Shown piece by piece: positions 10,140 through 44,600 of a stretch of 64,000 bases of DNA. The DNA lies in NCBI GenBank assembly GCA_000708835.1, contig DF237294.1:1-64000 (forward strand), read 5' to 3'. How positions within the stretch are numbered: position 1 is the stretch's first letter; each line of letters begins with the position of its first letter. Source of the DNA: Klebsormidium nitens (lineage: Eukaryota > Plantae > Klebsormidiophyceae). The translations under genes were made by a program, and so were the position numbers. The notes below the pieces were generated by a model. The model did not search any database, was not told where the DNA came from, and worked only from the letters and a program-made list of their open reading frames with translations.

Positions 10140-10960
10140 ACGACATAGCTTTCTGAAAGAACGTCTTCAGTCTCATTCCGAATACTTCACTCGCTCTTTG
10201 TCACTTTGCAGAGTGTGGCAATTCTCCCAACGAGGTATCTGCAACGCTGTAGCTTGTCAAGGGTTTGCAAGCGCACCTGATCCATGGAGAGTTTAGCCAG
10301 GTTGACCAGCTTGTCAAGGGTTAAGCAGCCACGAGTCCGCACCATAAGCACTCTCGTAGATCGCCATCGCTTGTTCCCGGTGCTCGACGGCTTCTTTGAA
10401 CTCTCTTTGGGTCCGTAGGAAGTCCGCCCTGCTATCATGATACTGGCAGTAGATAAGGGTGTCCTCAGGAACCTTGTGAGCCACCAGCAGCTTCTTCCAC
10501 CGCTTGTGAGCATTCCTGGAGCAAATCAGAGAAGACCGTTAAGCGCACGCCAGTCCCCTAGCAGGTTTGGCCTAGCACAAGAATTTCCCTCTGGCGGCTA
10601 TTCCCTAGCTTGAAGGGATAAAGATCGTTTGCGCAACATCCTCATGGAGTTACAGAATATCCAAGGATTGCAAGATCCTAAACATTCTTCTGGCAATTGC
10701 AGACGCGCTTTCCCGCATATTCTTGAGCTACATACAAATGAGCACACATAGAGGCATGGACGCAGGTTTCCAAGAGCGTTTTAGCAGCGTACCTGAGCTT
10801 GGCCGCATCCCCTGTGACTAGGTACAGGTTTGACAGCTGATGCAATGTAAGCGTGCTTATTACAAGGCTTGCGGCCGGAGTGTCCAGAACCTTGAAATAC
10901 ATTTGCTCTGCCTTGTAGCCACTTGGTGGGTACAAATAACCATTTCCGATCGGTAATGGG
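10140..10960 (-). pseudogene. Degenerate TPR-repeat gene (kinesin-light-chain-like repeats)
   Basis: TPR-like peptides KAEQMYFKVL..TLHQLSNLYLVTGD, AIARRMF..HEDVAQT, EAVEHREQAMAIYESAYGADSWLL and TLDKLVNLAKLSMDQ lie in different frames, separated by in-frame stops and frameshifts. Confidence 0.55.
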
Positions 10961-11150
10961 TCAGTTTCATGATAGGACGCATGTGCCCTAGAGTACTAAG
11001 TACTACTAGTGGCATTTGACTCTCGAGTCTCGAATTTTGAGCACTTCGAGAGAAACTGTGCGATCGGAATTCAGGGGTCGTCTCATGCACGCAGCTTGGC
11101 CTTCAGCTTGAGCTCATTGTAGGAGAAGACTCGTCGTCCTGGCAATCGCC

Positions 11151-11414
11151 ATGCCTCGGGCCATCTGGAAGGGCCCTTTCGTGGACGCTTTTTTGCTGAA
11201 ACCGGAGCGGCTGGCGGCAGCGGCACAGCGGCTCAAGATCTGGTCGCGGCGCTCCACGGTGCTGCCCGAGTTTGTGGGCAAGGTGTTCTCCATCCACAAC
11301 GGGCAGAAGTTCATCAACATCAAGGTCGCCGATGACATGGTGGGCCACAAGTTTGGGGAGTTTGCCAAGACCAGGAAAGCGCCAGTCCACAAGAAGAAGG
11401 ACGCTAAGAAGTAG
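11151..11414 (+). CDS. rps19: Ribosomal protein uS19, mitochondrial type, nuclear-encoded and intronless (87 aa)
   Basis: [12 protein letters not shown]...[26 protein letters not shown]...[14 protein letters not shown] is the uS19 signature. The MPRxxWKGxFVD start is typical of mitochondrial/alphaproteobacterial S19. Codon usage is GC3-rich like the host genes. Confidence 0.95.
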
Positions 11415-11503
11415 CACAGAAAACTAGGGTGGGCTGCGCGTCAATTCGCCCAGCGCCAGTAGGATTCGATTGATTTTTGCATTAGTGGCACCTGTCGTTC
11501 GCC

Positions 11504-14500
11504 ATGGACGGCTATGGCAGCCTGCGCGTGGCGGCCAGCCACAACGGCGTGAAAGTGTACAACATCTCGGGGGGCAAGAGCGTGCCGCAGTGGCTCTCGG
11601 AGAAGAAGCGGCGCGCGCTGCAGAAGGATGAGGGCTACCTGCGGCGCATCGAGCTCATCCAGGACCTGTCCTTTGACACGGCCGCCACGCGCGTCAAGGC
11701 CACCCCCGACAACAACTTCCTGGTGGTCTCCGGGGTGTACCCGCCGCAGGTCCGCGTGTACGAGTTCAGCCAGCTGTCCATGAAGTTTGAGCGCCACCTT
11801 GACTCGGAGATTGTGGACTTCCAGGTGCGGGTGCACCACCAAAACGCACCTTGTGCTTTACAGAGTTGCCCGGCTGGTTCCTGTCAGCTTTGCCAAGTTC
11901 CAGGTGGGGCTGGTGCTGTGTCGCGCTCCTTCTTGCTGACTATGACTCTTGACCGCACACTCCACAAATGATGAACGGGACCATCCGCTGGCTTGCTGTC
12001 TTGCAGGTCCTGGGCGATGACTACTCGAAGCTGGCGTTCCTGTGTGCGGATCGCACGCTGCAGTTCCACGCCCGCTTTGGCGCCTACTACAAGACGCGCA
12101 TCCCCAAGTTTGGCCGTGCGCTGACATACGACCGCTGGTCGTGCGACCTGCTGGCGGCGGCGTCGTCCCCCGAGGTGTACCGCCTGAACCTGGAGCAGGG
12201 CCGCTTCCTGGCGCCGCTCACCACGCGCTCCCCGGGGGTCAACGTCGTGGGGCGCAGCCCTGCGCACGGGCTTATTGCGTGCGGGGGCGAGGACGGTGCG
12301 CTGGAGTGCTTTGACCTGCGCTCGCGGCAGGCGGTGGGCAGGATTGACGCGGCAGGGCCTGCGGGGCCGGGGCAGCAGGTGACGGCGCTGCGCTTTGAGG
12401 AGCAGGACGGGCTGGCGCTCGCGGTGGGGACCAGCGGGGGGCAGGTGCGCAGCCAGCCAGCGCAACGGGCTCAGGAGGCCGGCAGCAGGCACACGGCCTT
12501 CTTTGCAGAACAAGTTGCACATCTTCTGTGTCAGCGCAGCCAGGAGCGCCAGCCTCTCATCTTCTTGACAACAACCAGGAAAGTTTCTACCTTGGCGAGG
12601 CTTTCTCAGCATCATATCTATCATCTTCCATAAGTGGTTGTACGTGTCCTGTCTCCCTTGCGTTGCCTTTGCCATGTCAGCTCGGTGCGTGCGGTGGGGC
12701 GCAGGTGCTGGTATACGACGTGCGGTCGTCGCGGCCGGTGCGCGTGAAGGACCACCTGTACGGCTGCCCCATTGTGGACATCAAGTACCACACTGCGCTC
12801 GCCAGCGGGCAGCGCCACATCATCTCCGCAGACACCAAGATTGCCAAAATCTGGGATCCTACAACTGTGAGCCTCGCTTCCGATCTGAAGACTCCTGTTT
12901 AAAATCTGCTCACGACTACCAAGGTCGTATTGCCCTGGTCAGGGCGCGCGGGACAGATAGGCAGTTCCTCATTTGCGGGTCAGCCTTTGTGGGGGCGAGT
13001 CAGGGCTGGGAGGCTGCCCCGGGCTTCCTGCCGTCTGCTGCCCGGTGCAGCCCGTCATCTCGTCATGGTGCCACGCGTGTGCTGACGCTGCTGCTGACGG
13101 CGGTGCGCAGGGCGACAACCTGAGCAGCATCGAGCCTGCCGGGGGCGACATTAATGACGTGTGCGTGCTGCGCGACAGCGGGCTCCTCCTGCTGGCGCTG
13201 GACGCGCCGCGCCTGCAGAACTACTTCATCCCCGCCTTGGGGCCCGCCCCGCGCTGGTGCTCCTTCCTTGACAACCTCACCGTGAGGGTTTCCGCCCCGT
13301 TGCAGTCCGTGTCATCCTCATTGCGCAGTCCCGTGCATATCTGCCCATTGAAAATGAGGTCTCGTTAAAATCTCCGCTAAAAGGCGAACACCGAAAGCTT
13401 GTGCGTGGTATTTCATTCAAAAGGCCACTGCTTGGAGATCGCCAGATCCGAATTCCAAGATTGACGGATATAGCTCTAAACGCTTTGCACTATTTCGGTC
13501 TAGAACACTTGTGTAGTCGGAATGGCAGGGCACGCAGAAAGCTTTACGTGACAGCCTGCTGCCTGCTTCGTTCCAACTTCGACTTGGCTGCCTGGTGTTT
13601 GAAGCATCGAGCGCATTACTTCCCTGGAAAAAGTCCCTTCTTAGAAGGATTCTGTTTGGTCGATCAGCGCCCCCTGCGAACCCCGTGGCCCGTTTTCCGT
13701 CATTTCGAAGGGCGTCCAGCCTCAGGGTGCCTGCTCGGGGGCCTGCGCGCATGCTCTGTGGTGCGCTGCGCTGGCGTATTCAGACTGGCGGTGCTGACGA
13801 GGTGGACGTGTGCGGGGGCTTGCAGGAGGAGCTAGAGGAGGCTGCGGGCGGCGGCGTGTACGAGGACTACAAGTTTGTGACGCGCGCCGAGCTGGCGACG
13901 CTGGGCCTGGCGCACCTGGTGGGGAGCAACCTGCTGCGCGCCTACATGCACGGCTTCTTCATCGACCACCGCCTCTACAACAAGGTCAGCGCACCCCCGA
14001 AGCGCGGCCAAGGCAGGCGAACCCTGATGAACCTAACTGCGTCAAGGCCGTCCGGTATCATACTTTGTTCCCGGAGTTGCGATTGCTGGCATGCTCATCA
14101 CAGGGGCTTGCCAAGGTGACTCGTGGTCTGTGAGGTAGAGCGTTGATGGATAAACCCTCAAGATGTTCGATTACGGGATTTTATCACGAGGTTCGGAGCC
14201 GAGGTGGATGCCAGTCGGGGCTTCAAGCCCGGCGCTGGTCCGGGCTGCGCGCTTGTCCCCTCGAATGCCCCGATCTTCTCTGACCTGTTGCGGGGCTGCT
14301 GTGCAGGCGAAGGACCTGGCGGATCCGTTTGCGTACGACCGCTACCGCGAGGAGCGCGTGCAGGCCAAGATTGACGCGGAGCGTGCCGCCAGGATCACGG
14401 TGAGCTCGCCACGCCGGGAGCAGAAATCGACAAATCTGTTGATTTCTGCGGTGCGGAAGCCGTTGGATGACTGGAGCGCTACAGCCTACCGGGTGGTTTT

Positions 14501-16307
14501 CAATACTTTGCTTGAAGACCAGGATTGCTTGCTCCTGTCAATGTACTCCTCTCCCTAATCTGCCGGCACTGCTGCCGCGGAGTGGTCCTGAGTCGCGGTG
14601 TGCTGCGCTGCGGTGCAGGTGAAGCGGCGGCTGCCCCGCGTGAACCCGGAGATGGCGGCGCGCCTGCTGCTGGACCAGGACGCGGCCACCGCCGCCAGCG
14701 ACGACGACGCGGGCGAGGCCGCGCGGGCGCCCGCCAGGAAGAAGGCCCGGGGCCTGCCCAGCCTGCTGGAGGACGACCGCTTTGCTGCACTCTTCAAGGA
14801 CCAGGTGCGCCGCGCAGCCTCGCACCTCCGGGATGCATATGCTCCGAATCAGTCTCCGCCAAAAAGCAACCCCGCGCCGCCCACCGAGGGGTGCGAGCTG
14901 TGAATTGCTCCCTTGGGGTGAAGGGGGTCTCACCAGACCCTGACCCCTACCACAGCCCTACTTCGATGGCCATTTGTAGCACTTTATCTTTTCTCGCTCA
15001 GAGAACCAGATTACCCGTTCTGCAGAAGTAGGTGACACTTGCAAGAGCCCATGCAAGCCACTTTTGAGGTCAGCGCCCCCGTTTGTCCCTGCCGCTGGTG
15101 CTTCCAGCCGCCGATTTCTCCTTTGCCACAACAACGTGCCCTGACGTGCCTTTCCGCGGCTCACCTTTGCTCTCGTTGGCGTGCGTGGCAGGCGTTCGCG
15201 GTCGACCCTGCGTCGGAGGAGTACCAGGCGCTGCACCCCAACGCGCCGGAGCGGCACGCCAAGGAGCGCGCGCTGCTCGAGGAGCACTTCCAGGACGTCG
15301 ACTCCGACGACGAGCCGCCTCGGGCGCAGCAAAGCGGCAGCGACACCGGCAGCGATGCGGGCAGCGAGCCGGAGGAGGACGTGCGCAGAAGCAAGAGCAA
15401 AAGGGCGGGAGAGGGCAAAGCGGCGTCGCAAGAGGGGCCCAGGTGAGGGAGAAACACAAAGACAGCCGACGTGAGGGGCTGGCAGGATCGCACCGGCTTA
15501 GTAGCCGGCTCAGCGGCCGGCTCCGTCTTATTCTTTGGGCGGGAATGCTGATGTCTGACGACTTCTTCAGTACATCAGAGCCGGGACAAGAAGTGAACAC
15601 CCCCTTTTGTCTTCTCGTCAATGACATAATCGGCTCCACTGCCCTCGAGGGCTGTACCTCTGAGGCGCAAAGGCTATGGCCGTTCGGAGAGAGCACTGCC
15701 AGGCTGCTTGGCAGTTCCTCTGTGGTATTGTTCACCGTATGGGCCGCCCATGGTCGAGTTGGACAGGGACTGCGCCAGGCTCTACCCCGTGCAGGACTTC
15801 TTGCACGCGTTGGGATGCTCCGGGAAAAGAAGAGGGCCCTCCTCGCACCAGCCTCGGCGTGCGCAACTGGTGCGCCATGCCTGGCCTGGCTAGCGGCTCG
15901 CTGACGCTCTGCCTGTGCGCGTGTGCTCCAGGATGTACGAGGTGCGGGACGAGCGGCACGCGGCCGCCTTCCTCCGGGGGCAGTCGTTGGCCGCGGCAGC
16001 CAATGAGACGCTGGGGGAGCGGGTGGCGCGGCAGCAAGCGGACGCAGCGGCAGGGCCGGGCGCGAGAGTGGGGGGCAGCCGCGAGACAACGTTTGTGGCG
16101 CGCACCAAAGACGATGGGGAGCTGCGGGGAAAGGGGCTGGGGCGGGAGGAGGGCGGGGACAGAAACCGACGGCAGGGCCAGCGGGGGGTCAAGGCGCTCA
16201 AGCTTCCAGGGGATCGGGGCAGGGGGCGGGGAAGGGGGCGGGGAGGGGGGCGGGGCGGGGGTCGGGGAGGAGGGGGAAGAGGCGGGGGAAGGAAAGGCAG
16301 GAGATGA
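11504..16307 (+). CDS. NOL10: Nucleolar protein 10 (Enp2 / NOL10), 9 exons
   Basis: Exons 11504-11824, 12007-12444, 12705-12866, 13111-13281, 13826-13984, 14307-14399, 14619-14804, 15192-15442, 15932-16307, all GT-AG and in phase. Motifs include GVKVYNISGGK, IELIQD, GVYPPQVRVYE..LSMKFERH, LGPAPRWCSFLDNLTEELE, YEDYKFVT, YMHGFFID and an RG-rich tail. Confidence 0.96.
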
Positions 16308-25126: not shown

Positions 25127-25298
25127 NNNNNNNNNNNNNNNNNNNNNNNNNNNNNNNNNNNNNNNNNNNNNNNNNNNNNNNNNNNNNNNNNNNNNNNNNN
25201 NNNNNNNNNNNNNNNNNNNNNNNNNNNNNNNNNNNNNNNNNNNNNNNNNNNNNNNNNNNNNNNNNNNNNNNNNNNNNNNNNNNNNNNNNNNNNNNNNN
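25127..25298. other. Assembly gap (N run)
   Basis: Run of N; it probably hides the 5' end of the transposase gene. Confidence 1.
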
Positions 25299-41685: not shown

Positions 41686-44600
41686 TCATGGCCATCGATT
41701 GGAGTGCGACACCATCATCTGTATCCGCTTGGTTTCCGCGAACCTGTCCGCCCCCTTCTCCCCTTTCTTGGGCGACCCGCTCGCCGCCGGCTTGCCCTCG
41801 TCGCCGGCCTTTCCCCGCCCACCCGCCCGCCCGAGCACGGCCGCCTTGTGCGGGCTGTTGCTGTCGTACAGCCGGGCATACCCGCCGCCGCCGCTGCCCG
41901 CCCCCGGCGACCCCTCCTCGCCGCCCTCGTCGGCGGCCGCCTTCCGGCCCCGCCCGCCCGCGGCCTTCTCCTGCGACCCCAGCTCCGGCTGCGCCTTGCT
42001 GCTCCGGGGCGAAATGGCCGGCAGCTTCACCGTGCCCGCGCCACCAGTTTGGAGCGAGCCGGGGGGCGCCTTCCGCCCGGGCGGATGAGCAGAGCCTGCA
42101 ACGGCGTCGCAAGTGTCGTAAACACGCAGACTCCAATCGCTCCTCTTGACAATATTCCCCTCCTTTTGGCATGCCTTGCAACGCTCGTTCACACCGGGGA
42201 GCTTACACGACCTCGGTCAATGACTTAGGGCTCACATCCCAGGTTCGACCGCTTTCCCGGCCCTTTCGCAAGTTATCGAGCATTTACAAAGCTAGCAATA
42301 GTCCGCTTGATCCGTGCCTCTCCTGCTGGTCTCTTTGTTTCTCACCTCCCGCCCCGGCCGGTCCTGCGTGCGTCCTGCCCCCCGGTGGCGCTGCCCCGTT
42401 GGGCGCGGGGTTGCTGCTCTGCGGCGGCGGCGCTGTGCGGTAGGCGGCCTGGTCGGTCATGCGCAGGTTGTGGCTGCGCTGCAGGGAGTAGTCGATGGCG
42501 CCGCGCAGCTCCATGTCGATCTCGCGCCCGATGTACAGCTTCTCCACCAGCGCGTCCATCTTCTCCTTGGTCATGTCCAGCTCGCGCTTGCGGTCCAGCA
42601 CCTCGTTCTTCGCCTCGCGGATGGACGTCGCGGCCGCCTCCGCCTGCCCGCGCCACTTCTCCATCTCCACGTGCATCGTGCGCGTGCGGCTCTCCAGCTC
42701 CACGCGCAGCCGCTCGATCTCCGCGCCCATCTTCAGCATCTGCACCGCCGCCACGCCGCGCGTCAGGGAGCCGCCCAGGAGACGGCCACGCGACCACAAA
42801 CTGCGAGGTCTCGCAACGGATCGCAACGGCTATTGTGACCTTCCCCTCTTCAGGATAAGGGTGTCGGTAAACCTGTTGACCAAACATGCTTCGACGAAAA
42901 GAAGACCTGCTACAAAGGTGGCCTGGGAGCAAAGTGGACTTGCGGTTCAGCCGAGTCCTTCTACAGACCAGCGCTGGCTCTGACATCGACTCAGAGCGTG
43001 CAGCCGTGTGGCACGGTGCTTGAGCAATGCCGCAGCGCTGACCACGGCATGGTGCTCCGCTTCGGCCTTAAGGCGAGCGAGCTGCTCCGCGTTCTTGGCG
43101 GCCTCCTCGGCCTTGTTCACGGCGGACGCCAGCCGCTTGTTCTCCGCCGCCAGGCCCGCCAGCTGCTTCTCCGCGTACTCCTTCTCCGCCGCCAGCTCCG
43201 CGCGCTCCGCCTCCAGGGCCGCCACGCTCTCCTGCACGCCACTCACGCGGACCGCGGCCTCCTCGGCGCTGCACGCACGACGATGCGGAACAAAGCTAAG
43301 GACGGATCTATCAATCTACCTCAAGACCATTTGAGTGACCTACCGTTTCCCCATGAACAAGAGTCGTGTTTCCGAAGTTTGGGCTGGGGCTTTCAACCCA
43401 CAGCCAAAGATCTGCTTCATATGTACAGATCGGAACGTGGACACGTATGGCGTTGCGCTACATAAGTAGAAAAGAGCACCCGGCACAACTGGGCCAGCCA
43501 GCTGCCAGTGCACCCCATGCCGGGGTGGGCGAGGCTCACTGTACGAGGCGCTGATTCTTCTGCTCCAGGCGCTCCCACTTGTCCGCATAGTCCTGCATCG
43601 CGCGCCGTGCCTCGTCGAGGCCCTCCTCGGCCATGCGGCGCGCGGCCTGGCTCTCCTTGAAGTGCTTCTCAATGAGTACCATCATGTCCTCCAGCTCGAG
43701 CCGCGTCGCAGCCTCGGTCTCCGCCTGGCAAGCAAGCAGCGGGCGAGATGAGTTGGAAATTGGTGTGGAGGAGAGCTGATTCCGAGTGCGAANNNNNNNN
43801 NNNNNNNNNNNNNNNNNNNNNNNNNNNNNNNNNNNNNNNNNNNNNNNNNNNNNNNNNNNNNNNNNNNNNNNNNNNNNNNNNNNNNNNNNNNNNNNNNNNN
43901 NNNNNNNNNNNNNNNNNNNNNNNNNNNNNNNNNNNNNNNNNNNNNNNNNNNNNNNNNNNNNNNNNNNNNNNNNNNNNNNNNNNNNNNNNNNNNNNNNNNN
44001 NNNNNNNNNNNNNNNNNNNNNNNNNNNNNNNNNNNNNNNNNNNNNNNNNNNNNNNNNNNNNNNNNNNNNNNNNNNNNNNNNNNNNNNNNNNNNNNNNNNN
44101 NNNNNNNNNNNNNNNNNNNNNNNNNNNNNNNNNNNNNNNNNNNNNNNNNNNNNNNNNNNNNNNNNNNNNNNNNNNNNNNNNNNNNNNNNNNNNNNNNNNN
44201 NNNNNNNNNNNNNNNNNNNNNNNNNNNNNNNNNNNNNNNNNNNNNNNNNNNNNNNNNNNNNNNNNNNNNNNNNNNNNNNNNNNNNNNNNNNNNNNNNNNN
44301 NNNNNNNNNNNNNNNNNNNNNNNNNNNNNNNNNNNNAAGATAATTGTCGAGGAGCATCCTCGAACACGCCTGGTACGTCACCGAGTCAATGAAAAAGTGA
44401 AGAACAAGCTGTCGGAAGGACAAAACAGGGACTGCGAAGAACGATGCGAACTATCAGTTGCTGCAATGTGTCCAATTTGTATCTCTCAAAGCTTTTGATA
44501 AGACGAAGACGTTCCAAGAATTAGTAAGCCATGGAGGCTCAATCACAAGATGAGCTCTCGTCATAATGGACAGCGACAACAGACTTTTTCGGCTCTGCTT

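What the first reader, a model, noticed from the sequence alone, without database searches (positions are those of the whole stretch)
11151..11824. Probable bicistronic locus: intronless mitochondrial-type rps19 only 89 nt upstream of NOL10
Seen: rps19 stops at 11414 and NOL10 starts at 11504 on the same strand. The 89-nt spacer has no ATG, no TGTAA or AATAAA poly(A) signal and no TATA box. The rps19 start (gccATGC) lacks the +4 G present at the NOL10 start (gccATGG), and the rps19 ORF has only two internal ATGs. Known: polycistronic mRNAs with a short upstream ORF, translated by leaky scanning, are described in Chlamydomonas and Chromochloris. Inferred: one mRNA could couple a mitoribosomal protein to a cytosolic 40S biogenesis factor, co-regulating two ribosome systems.
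Basis: partly seen in the sequence, partly recalled or inferred. Interest (0 to 1): 0.72.

Follow-up and report, generated by a model that had tools for sequence, protein, structure and literature searches.

The report
Mitochondrial rps19 riding on NOL10 mRNA
In this green alga (earlier scan notes name it Klebsormidium nitens), a ribosomal protein gene that left the mitochondrial genome now sits in the leader of the mRNA for the nucleolar ribosome-assembly factor NOL10. It is a new, RNA-supported example of a two-protein messenger RNA, and possibly a new way for a relocated organelle gene to get expressed.

Summary
An intronless 87-codon bacterial/mitochondrial-type uS19 ORF (11151-11414) ends 89 nt before the NOL10 start (11504) on the same strand. 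The spacer has no ATG, TGTAA or AATAAA.

In four RNA data sets from four studies, a single spliced contig starts at 11043-11072. It runs unbroken through rps19, the spacer and NOL10 exon 1 into later exons. No other contig lies on 11088-11678, and 10917-11042 has no coverage.

Three related algal contigs keep the same tandem (spacers 97-118 nt, all ATG-free). Both ORFs are under strong purifying selection (dN/dS about 0.03-0.04 at dS about 1.1). Eighty other NOL10 loci from metagenomes have no rps19 beside them.

Published work reports that Klebsormidiales mitochondrial genomes lack rps19. The likeliest reading is therefore a lineage-specific transfer to the nucleus, expressed as the first cistron of the NOL10 mRNA.

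The +4 C is forced by the conserved Pro2, internal ATGs are not depleted, and one has a strong context. The way NOL10 is translated stays open, and no long read shows a single molecule.

Earlier notes of this scan report several other bicistronic loci in this genome.

The parts
11043..11150 (+). 5' leader of the rps19-NOL10 transcript (approximate transcript start)
   Evidence: The RNA contigs of four runs begin at 11072, 11043, 11044 and 11050. Depth arithmetic on tables 2 and 8 shows no RNA on 10917-11071 in X1 and none on 10917-11042 in X4.
11085..11111 (+). 8-codon uORF in the leader (weak context ctcATGc), not conserved in relatives
   Evidence: L001, L010 and L011 have no ATG in the 108-120 nt upstream of rps19.
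11151..11414 (+). Intronless ORF 1: mitochondrial-type ribosomal protein uS19 (87 aa), with no N-terminal extension
   Evidence: PF00203 at 1.3e-26 and TIGR01050 at 115 bits. The nearest relatives are mitochondrion-encoded and alphaproteobacterial S19. Arabidopsis uS19m is the second-best solved structure. dN/dS is 0.03-0.04. GC3 is 0.84, close to NOL10.
11415..11503 (+). 89-nt inter-ORF spacer: ATG-free, no poly(A) motif, no unusual RNA structure
   Evidence: The fold z-score is -0.53. A single RNA contig covers it in each of 4 runs, with no contig ends, joints or loose ends there.
11504..11824 (+). NOL10 (Enp2) exon 1, with the orthologous start codon
   Evidence: PF23098 at 7.8e-19. The N-terminus aligns with other NOL10 proteins. 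A GT..AG joint leads to 12007 in all 4 runs.
12007..12444 (+). NOL10 exon 2
   Evidence: Joints, Pfam, frame check.
12705..12866 (+). NOL10 exon 3
13111..13281 (+). NOL10 exon 4
13826..13984 (+). NOL10 exon 5 (NOL10_2nd domain)
   Evidence: PF23097 at 1.4e-25.
14307..14399 (+). NOL10 exon 6
14619..14804 (+). NOL10 exon 7
15192..15442 (+). NOL10 exon 8 (NUC153)
   Evidence: PF08159.
15932..16307 (+). NOL10 last coding exon with an RGG-rich tail. The stop at 16305-16307 is inferred from the open frame, and RNA contigs stop at 16110-16115
   Evidence: Joint 15438->15928, ORF 15915-16307, frame check.

Best explanation
This is a nuclear bicistronic gene. One capped, spliced mRNA starts near 11043. 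It carries first an intronless ORF for the mitochondrial ribosomal protein uS19m and, 89 nt later, the 9-exon ORF for the nucleolar 40S-assembly factor NOL10/Enp2.

The rps19 ORF is the functional nuclear copy of a gene that the Klebsormidiales lost from their mitochondrial DNA. It has no promoter, poly(A) signal or presequence of its own and uses those of NOL10; that it was inserted into the NOL10 leader is an inference.

Scanning ribosomes that start at the first good AUG make uS19m. NOL10 is made by ribosomes that pass the rps19 AUG (leaky scanning, by analogy with tested chlorophyte bicistrons). Reinitiation after the short ORFs that open at the internal AUGs may also contribute.

Shown: the anatomy, continuous RNA contigs, conservation of the tandem, and selection on both ORFs. 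Inferred: a single molecule, the translation mechanism, import into mitochondria, and the insertion history.
For: - **RNA.** In 4 runs from 4 studies a single contig begins at 11043-11072 and runs through rps19, the spacer and exon 1, with a GT..AG joint to exon 2. In X13 it continues through exon 4 and beyond. No second contig lies on 11088-11678, and no joint, loose end or contig end falls in the spacer. The mean depth of this 5' contig is close to that of the NOL10-only contigs in three runs (280 vs 236-318; 73.5 vs 77.5; 125 vs 130-160).
- **Conservation.** The same tandem occurs in L001 (rps19 99% aa; spacer 97 nt) and in L010/L011 (92% aa; spacers 117/118 nt).
- **Spacers.** They are largely unalignable between the two pairs, yet all are ATG-free. 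Shuffle probabilities are 0.24, 0.32 and 0.165/0.14. Every upstream-AUG ORF ends at least 75 nt before the NOL10 AUG.
- **Selection.** dN/dS is 0.03-0.04 for rps19 and 0.03-0.04 for NOL10 exon 1, at dS about 1.1-1.3.
- **Mitochondrial type.** The closest relatives lie in mitochondrial S10-S19-S3-L16 clusters or are alphaproteobacterial. Arabidopsis uS19m scores 84.7 bits against 63-67 bits for chloroplast uS19c.
- **Literature.** rps19 is missing from Klebsormidium and Entransia mtDNA and is presumed transferred to the nucleus (PMC3814193). Leaky scanning has been tested in chlorophyte bicistrons (PMC11892635). The ORF and spacer sizes fit the known range (PMC7896298).
Against: - Contigs assembled from short reads cannot prove a single molecule. 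Overlapping transcripts would merge, and the tool itself warns of this.
- The rps19 AUG has a purine at -3, so it is not clearly weak.
- The conserved in-frame AUG at 11337 has a strong context. L010/L011 carry 4 internal AUGs against 1.6 expected. Selection for easy leaky scanning is therefore not visible inside ORF 1.
- The organism name rests on earlier AI notes, so the link to the mtDNA paper is only partly tested.
- No protein-level evidence is available for either ORF.
- A second rps19 or NOL10 copy elsewhere in the genome was not excluded.
Confidence: 0.68

Rival explanations
1. There are two separate or overlapping monocistronic mRNAs. The rps19 mRNA would end at a cryptic poly(A) site in the spacer or in early NOL10, and NOL10 would start from its own promoter in the spacer or inside rps19. 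The assembler would have merged them into one contig. A mixed case, with both bicistronic and monocistronic forms, belongs here too.
For: Contigs cannot show the ends of molecules (warning). Gallaher et al. report many loci that are only partly polycistronic (PMC7896298). NOL10 is essential, and translating it behind 3-5 AUGs looks inefficient.
Against: All four studies show one contig and no contig end, loose end or extra contig on 11088-11678. The spacer has no poly(A) motif or TATA. A spacer of 89-118 nt that stays ATG-free in four taxa is not expected for an ordinary intergenic region holding a terminator and a promoter. Contig depths are near-equal.
Confidence: 0.2
2. The mRNA is bicistronic, but NOL10 is translated mainly by termination-reinitiation, not by leaky scanning past the rps19 AUG. 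Reinitiation would follow rps19 itself, or the 25- and 31-codon ORFs that open at 11337 and 11332.
For: The rps19 AUG has a -3 purine. The internal gacATGg is strong and conserved. All upstream ORFs end 75-118 nt before the NOL10 AUG in all four taxa, a spacing that suits reacquisition of initiation factors. Internal AUGs are not depleted.
Against: In tested green-algal bicistrons, strengthening the ORF 1 Kozak context lowered ORF 2 output and weakening it raised it, which argues for leaky scanning (PMC11892635). From general knowledge, reinitiation after an 87-codon ORF is usually poor.
Confidence: 0.25
3. The rps19 ORF is only a regulatory upstream ORF or a decaying organelle-DNA insert, and makes no functional uS19m.
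For: It has no presequence and lies in a 5' leader. The exact protein is not on record in the protein collection.
Against: dN/dS is 0.03-0.04 over saturated synonymous divergence. The match to the S19 equivalog model is full-length and above cut-off. GC3 is nuclear-type at 0.84. The mtDNA of this order lacks rps19. Yeast and Neurospora uS19m are also only 91 residues long.
Confidence: 0.03

Closest known systems
Exclusively polycistronic nuclear mRNAs of chlorophyte green algae (Chlamydomonas, Chromochloris, Auxenochlorella; PMC7896298, PMC11892635)
   Same: A small upstream ORF for a real protein lies a short distance before a larger ORF. There is one apparent transcript start, colinearity is kept in relatives, and the spacer has no IRES-like structure. 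Upstream partners destined for mitochondria are common in those sets (TOM22-like, LYR-motif proteins).
   Different: By the scan's notes the host is a streptophyte alga. This pair (uS19m-NOL10) is absent from the main text of both papers and from the held supplements of the 2025 paper. ORF 1 shows no visible weak-Kozak or AUG-depletion signature. Evidence here is short-read contigs, not Iso-Seq or proteomics.
CDC26-TTM3 bicistronic transcript of land plants and green algae (as summarised in PMC11892635)
   Same: It is a streptophyte-lineage mRNA with a short first cistron whose stop codon lies upstream of many exon junctions. The same interplay with nonsense-mediated decay is therefore expected here (inference).
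   Different: CDC26-TTM3 is ancient and widely conserved. The rps19-NOL10 link was seen only in this alga and three close relatives, and in none of 80 other NOL10 loci.
Mitochondrial rps14 relocated into an intron of nuclear sdh2 in grasses (PMC1543663)
   Same: A mitochondrial ribosomal protein gene moved to the nucleus sits inside a pre-existing nuclear gene and uses its expression signals.
   Different: rps14 is expressed by alternative splicing and borrows the sdh2 targeting sequence. Here no splice joint touches rps19. It keeps its own start and stop, gains no presequence, and would be read as a separate first cistron.
Arabidopsis nuclear uS19m (chain 6xyw_Br, 212 aa)
   Same: It is the closest solved mitochondrial relative (84.7 bits) and also a nuclear copy of a former mitochondrial gene.
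   Different: The Arabidopsis protein has about 130 extra N-terminal residues. This one has none: an in-frame stop lies 13 codons upstream.

Membership tests
uS19, bacterial/organellar type (PF00203; TIGR01050 rpsS_bact) | Full-length match above the curated cut-offs | tested here: met
   PF00203 at 92.7 bits (cut-off 27), profile positions 1-80 of 81. TIGR01050 at 115.3 bits (cut-off 89.35).
Mitochondrial uS19m (nuclear-encoded) | Closest to mitochondrial and alphaproteobacterial S19, not to plastid or cytosolic S19/S15 | tested here: met
   The top hits are mitochondrion-encoded (S10-S19-S3-L16, YMF19 contexts) and alphaproteobacterial. Arabidopsis uS19m scores 84.7 bits, chloroplast uS19c 63-67 bits, and the archaeal/cytosolic models fall below cut-off. 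No named tree was built.
Mitochondrial uS19m (nuclear-encoded) | Gene absent from the organism's own mitochondrial genome | tested here: inconclusive
   PMC3814193 reports rps19 missing from Klebsormidium and Entransia mtDNA. That this window is Klebsormidium rests on earlier scan notes, which I could not check directly.
Mitochondrial uS19m (nuclear-encoded) | Import into mitochondria and presence in the mitoribosome | not testable with these tools
   There is no presequence. The 91-aa yeast and Neurospora uS19m show that a short form is possible.
NOL10 / Enp2 | NOL10 N-terminal beta-propeller, NOL10 second domain and NUC153 | tested here: met
   PF23098 on exons 1-4, PF23097 on exon 5 (1.4e-25), PF08159 on exon 8.
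Exclusively polycistronic nuclear mRNA (sense of PMC7896298) | Both ORFs on one transcript molecule, with one start and one poly(A) tail | tested here: inconclusive
   There is one spliced contig per run in 4 studies, no ends in the spacer and no RNA just upstream. Contigs are not molecules, and the 3' end was not mapped.
Exclusively polycistronic nuclear mRNA (sense of PMC7896298) | Equal transcript abundance of both ORFs | tested here: inconclusive
   The contig that holds rps19 has about the same mean depth as the NOL10-only contigs in three runs. Contig means are a poor measure.
Exclusively polycistronic nuclear mRNA (sense of PMC7896298) | Both ORFs translated into separate proteins | not testable with these tools
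   Proxy evidence only. There is strong purifying selection on both ORFs. Their relative frames differ among taxa (2, 1, 0, 1), which excludes a conserved fusion or readthrough product.
Exclusively polycistronic nuclear mRNA (sense of PMC7896298) | Colinear ORF pair kept in other species | tested here: met
   L001, L010 and L011 keep it. It is absent from 80 more distant NOL10 loci and from one further NOL10 locus whose upstream neighbour is ubiquitin-L40e.
Leaky-scanning bicistron (PMC11892635) | Weak start context at ORF 1 and few or weak AUGs before ORF 2 | tested here: not met
   Position -3 is a purine in all four taxa. Internal AUGs number 2-4 against 1.5-1.6 expected. One has the strong context gacATGg. 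Only the spacer is AUG-free. No genome-wide Kozak model was available.
Transferred organelle gene hitch-hiking in a host gene (rps14-sdh2 type, PMC1543663) | Expression through alternative splicing with a borrowed presequence | tested here: not met
   There are no joints between 11043 and 11821 in any run and no N-terminal extension.

The most novel reading that the evidence does not exclude
A mitochondrial gene became a working nuclear gene by landing in the 5' leader of an essential, strongly expressed housekeeping gene. It has stayed there as the first cistron of a bicistronic mRNA. This route of organelle-to-nucleus gene activation needs no promoter, poly(A) signal, intron or presequence of its own. 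It also ties the supply of a mitoribosomal protein to the transcription of a cytosolic ribosome-assembly factor.
Probability: 0.45. Interest if true: 0.7.

Novelty: new member of a known kind. Interest (0 to 1): 0.52.

Why it matters
Two-protein mRNAs are catalogued in chlorophyte algae, and a few are known in land plants. This locus adds a well-supported case in a streptophyte alga, where earlier notes of this scan report several more.

Its special point is the first cistron. It is a gene known to have left the mitochondrial genome only in this order of algae. How transferred organelle genes first get expressed is a long-standing question, and known answers are promoter capture, exon shuffling and alternative splicing. 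Entry into the leader of an expressed gene as an extra cistron would be a simple further answer. It can be tested with long reads, ribosome profiling, and comparison with Entransia and other Klebsormidiophyceae.

It also flags a functional gene that the protein collection does not hold and that gene finders may well miss.

Tried and rejected
- **IRES or structured spacer.** The fold of 11405-11520 is no better than shuffles (z = -0.53), and the spacer sequence is not conserved.
- **Fusion, readthrough or frameshift product.** The frame of NOL10 relative to rps19 differs among taxa (2, 1, 0, 1), and stops occur in the spacer frames.
- **Alternative splicing that skips rps19.** There are no joints upstream of 11821.
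- **ATG depletion inside rps19 as evidence for leaky scanning.** Not supported.
- **Co-transfer with rps10, as Turmel et al. suggested.** tblastn with two mitochondrial S10 proteins finds nothing in the 64-kb window. rpl2 was not tested, for lack of a query.
- **Wider synteny.** None of the 80 metagenomic NOL10 loci has rps19 within the up to 4 kb of flank held, and some loci hold little upstream sequence. One GC-rich relative has ubiquitin-L40e upstream.
- **Published lists.** The supplements of PMC7896298 are not held. The 7 held supplement files of PMC11892635 contain no S19, NOL10 or ENP2.
- **Klebsormidium literature.** No paper in the library links Klebsormidium to nuclear bicistronic mRNAs. 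None describes a bicistronic route of mitochondrial gene transfer.
- **Bacterial promoter/terminator scan.** Irrelevant here.
- **Joined NOL10 protein.** In one search the in-phase exons were concatenated inside a script only to compute GC3, and were neither printed nor searched.
- **The big representative search.** Not used. At 50% clustering nearly all S19 proteins would collapse together.
Full report
**Observation**

- An 87-codon ORF runs from the ATG at 11151 to the TAG at 11412-11414.
- The next ATG on the strand is at 11504 and opens NOL10.
- The 89-nt spacer has no ATG, TGTAA, AATAAA or TATA.
- The ORF is a full-length bacterial/organellar uS19: PF00203 at 1.3e-26, and TIGR01050 at 115 bits against a cut-off of 89.

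The downstream gene is NOL10/Enp2. The NOL10 beta-propeller lies on exons 1-4, the NOL10 second domain on exon 5 and NUC153 on exon 8. From the RNA joints and a frame check it has 9 coding exons, 8 GT..AG introns and about 718 codons. The stop at 16305-16307 is inferred from the open frame only.

An in-frame stop lies 13 codons upstream of the rps19 ATG, so the protein has no N-terminal extension. The leader holds an 8-codon uORF (11085-11111) that the relatives lack.

**RNA evidence**

The runs found for this stretch were labelled only as guessed RNA. Their contigs carry nine GT..AG or CT..AC joints, so they are RNA. I laid four runs from four studies.

In each run, one contig starts at 11043-11072. 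It runs without a break through the leader, rps19, the spacer and NOL10 exon 1, and is spliced from 11824 to 12007. In run X13 the same 1772-nt contig goes on through exon 4 and beyond.

The binned depths over 11088-11678 equal the depth of that single contig in every run, so no other contig lies there. The bin 10891-11087 is fully explained by the two flanking contigs. In X1 and X4, where this arithmetic can be done, nothing is transcribed between 10917 and the start of the contig.

No joint, loose end or contig end falls in rps19 or the spacer. In three runs the mean depth of the contig that holds rps19 is close to that of the NOL10-only contigs (280 vs 236-318; 73.5 vs 77.5; 125 vs 130-160).

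This fits one transcription unit with a start near 11043. Contigs are not molecules, and the tool says so itself. A single mRNA is therefore well supported but not proven.

**Relatives**

The word search with the rps19 protein found one close cluster.
- Its genomic contig L001 has the same order with a 97-nt spacer (99% aa identity).
- A search with NOL10 exon 1 led to two contigs of one metagenome, L010 and L011. Both have rps19 117-118 nt before NOL10 (92% aa identity).

In the alignment the two ORFs are conserved. The leader and spacer are largely unalignable between the two pairs.

Nei-Gojobori estimates give dN/dS of 0.03-0.04 for rps19 and 0.03-0.04 for NOL10 exon 1, at dS about 1.1-1.3. 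Both ORFs are therefore kept as proteins, and the link has outlasted saturation of silent sites.

All four spacers lack ATG, with shuffle probabilities of 0.24, 0.32, 0.165 and 0.14. Treating them as roughly two to three independent lineages gives a joint chance of a few per cent at most.

The relative reading frame changes (2, 1, 0, 1), which rules out a conserved fusion or readthrough.

The link is narrow. Eighty NOL10 loci fetched from metagenomes have no rps19 within the up to 4 kb of flank held. One further GC-rich NOL10 locus has a ubiquitin-L40e gene upstream.

**What the rps19 gene is**

Apart from that close cluster, its nearest relatives (53-64% identity) fall into two groups. Some are genes in mitochondrial S10-S19-S3-L16 clusters, one of them next to ymf19. 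The others are alphaproteobacterial S19.

Among solved structures, Arabidopsis uS19m is second best at 84.7 bits. Chloroplast uS19c scores 63-67 bits.

GC3 is 0.84, like NOL10 at 0.91, so the codon usage is nuclear.

Earlier notes of this scan name the genome Klebsormidium nitens. I could not verify that directly, so I treat it as a lead. If it holds, the locus matches a published prediction. Turmel et al. found rps8, rps10, rpl2 and rps19 missing from both Klebsormidium and Entransia mtDNA and proposed transfer to the nucleus (PMC3814193). They suggested that rps10, rpl2 and rps19 moved together. I found no rps10 in this 64-kb window.

**Likely history and mechanism**

The simplest reading is that the transferred, intronless rps19 came to lie in the 5' leader of NOL10 and uses its promoter and poly(A) site. 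The grounds for this reading are:
- rps19 has no intron, no presequence and no signals of its own.
- NOL10 loci elsewhere lack it.
- The pair is kept while the upstream neighbour is not.

This is an inference.

For translation, the best-tested model in green algae is leaky scanning (PMC11892635). The sizes here also fit known bicistrons: ORF 1 is 264 nt and the spacer 89 nt, against medians of 444-600 nt and 212-260 nt (PMC7896298).

- The +4 C belongs to the conserved Pro2 codon.
- Position -3 is a purine in all four taxa.
- Internal ATGs are as many as, or more than, synonymous resampling predicts: 2 against 1.46, and 4 against 1.59 in L010/L011.
- The in-frame ATG at 11337 has a strong gacATGg context everywhere.

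What is conserved is the AUG-free spacer. Every upstream ORF also ends 75-118 nt before the NOL10 AUG. That would equally suit reinitiation after the short internal ORFs, so I leave the split between the two mechanisms open.

The spacer has no unusual structure (z = -0.53).

The rps19 stop lies upstream of eight exon junctions. By analogy with CDC26-TTM3, the mRNA should be exposed to nonsense-mediated decay unless NOL10 translation clears the junctions. This too is an inference.

**Comparison and novelty**

The locus works like the polycistronic genes of chlorophytes and like CDC26-TTM3. I file it as a new member of that kind.

It also resembles grass rps14 inside sdh2 (PMC1543663), in that a relocated mitochondrial gene lives inside a host gene. 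It fails that system's defining features, which are alternative splicing and a borrowed presequence.

I found no paper describing this pair, nuclear bicistrons in Klebsormidium, or a bicistronic route of organelle gene transfer. The library is incomplete, and the supplement lists of Gallaher et al. are not held.

Earlier notes of this scan report other bicistronic candidates in the same genome: APC13-RH18, CHORD-like-CobW, CX9C-CGI121, ASDURF-like-CNX7, ISD11-TrmB and microprotein-CFAP20. I did not test those. They suggest the arrangement is common here, which lowers the surprise of one more case.

**Verdict**

The bicistronic reading is well supported, at about 0.7. The translation mechanism and the co-regulation idea are unproven. 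The organelle-transfer angle is the most interesting part and is testable.

Noticed in passing
window 10300-10916 (- strand): The last two exons of a TPR-repeat gene lie here (stop near 10314-10316; CT..AC joint 10514/10792 in all 4 RNA runs). The RNA contigs run on beyond 10916 for about 190-255 or more letters into sequence with no 12-mer match anywhere in the window. 10917-11042 has no RNA. The 5' part of that gene is therefore not in this 64-kb window, which suggests a rearrangement breakpoint, a misassembly or a distant exon about 130 nt from the rps19-NOL10 transcript start. T>C at 10858 occurs in 3 of 4 runs.
   Followed up: partly
window 25127-25298 and 43793-44336: Runs of N (assembly gaps) of 172 and 544 bases.
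   Followed up: no
window 11504-14804: The first seven NOL10 coding exons all have lengths divisible by three, so every one of the first seven introns is in phase 0.
   Followed up: no
window 12419-12730, 13253-13855, 15449-15957: Low-depth contigs (about 3-8% of the spliced depth) cover introns 2, 4 and 8. This is ordinary unspliced precursor or minor intron retention.
   Followed up: no
window 16110-16307: The NOL10 C-terminus is an RGG/GGR-rich tail. RNA contigs end at 16110-16115, and one run has a 31-letter loose end there that does not match the window, so the 3' end of the gene model is not RNA-confirmed.
   Followed up: partly
L010 and L011 (JGI metagenome 3300060284): Two long contigs of one sample encode identical rps19 and NOL10 exon 1 proteins but differ at silent sites (dS 0.03-0.13) and in flanking genes. 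They may be two haplotypes, subgenomes or sister species of a related alga.
   Followed up: no
window 11151-11414: The exact 87-aa rps19 product is not on record in the large protein and gene collection, and no 100% hit appeared in the protein search. The ORF may be unannotated in public gene sets, as upstream cistrons often are.
   Followed up: partly
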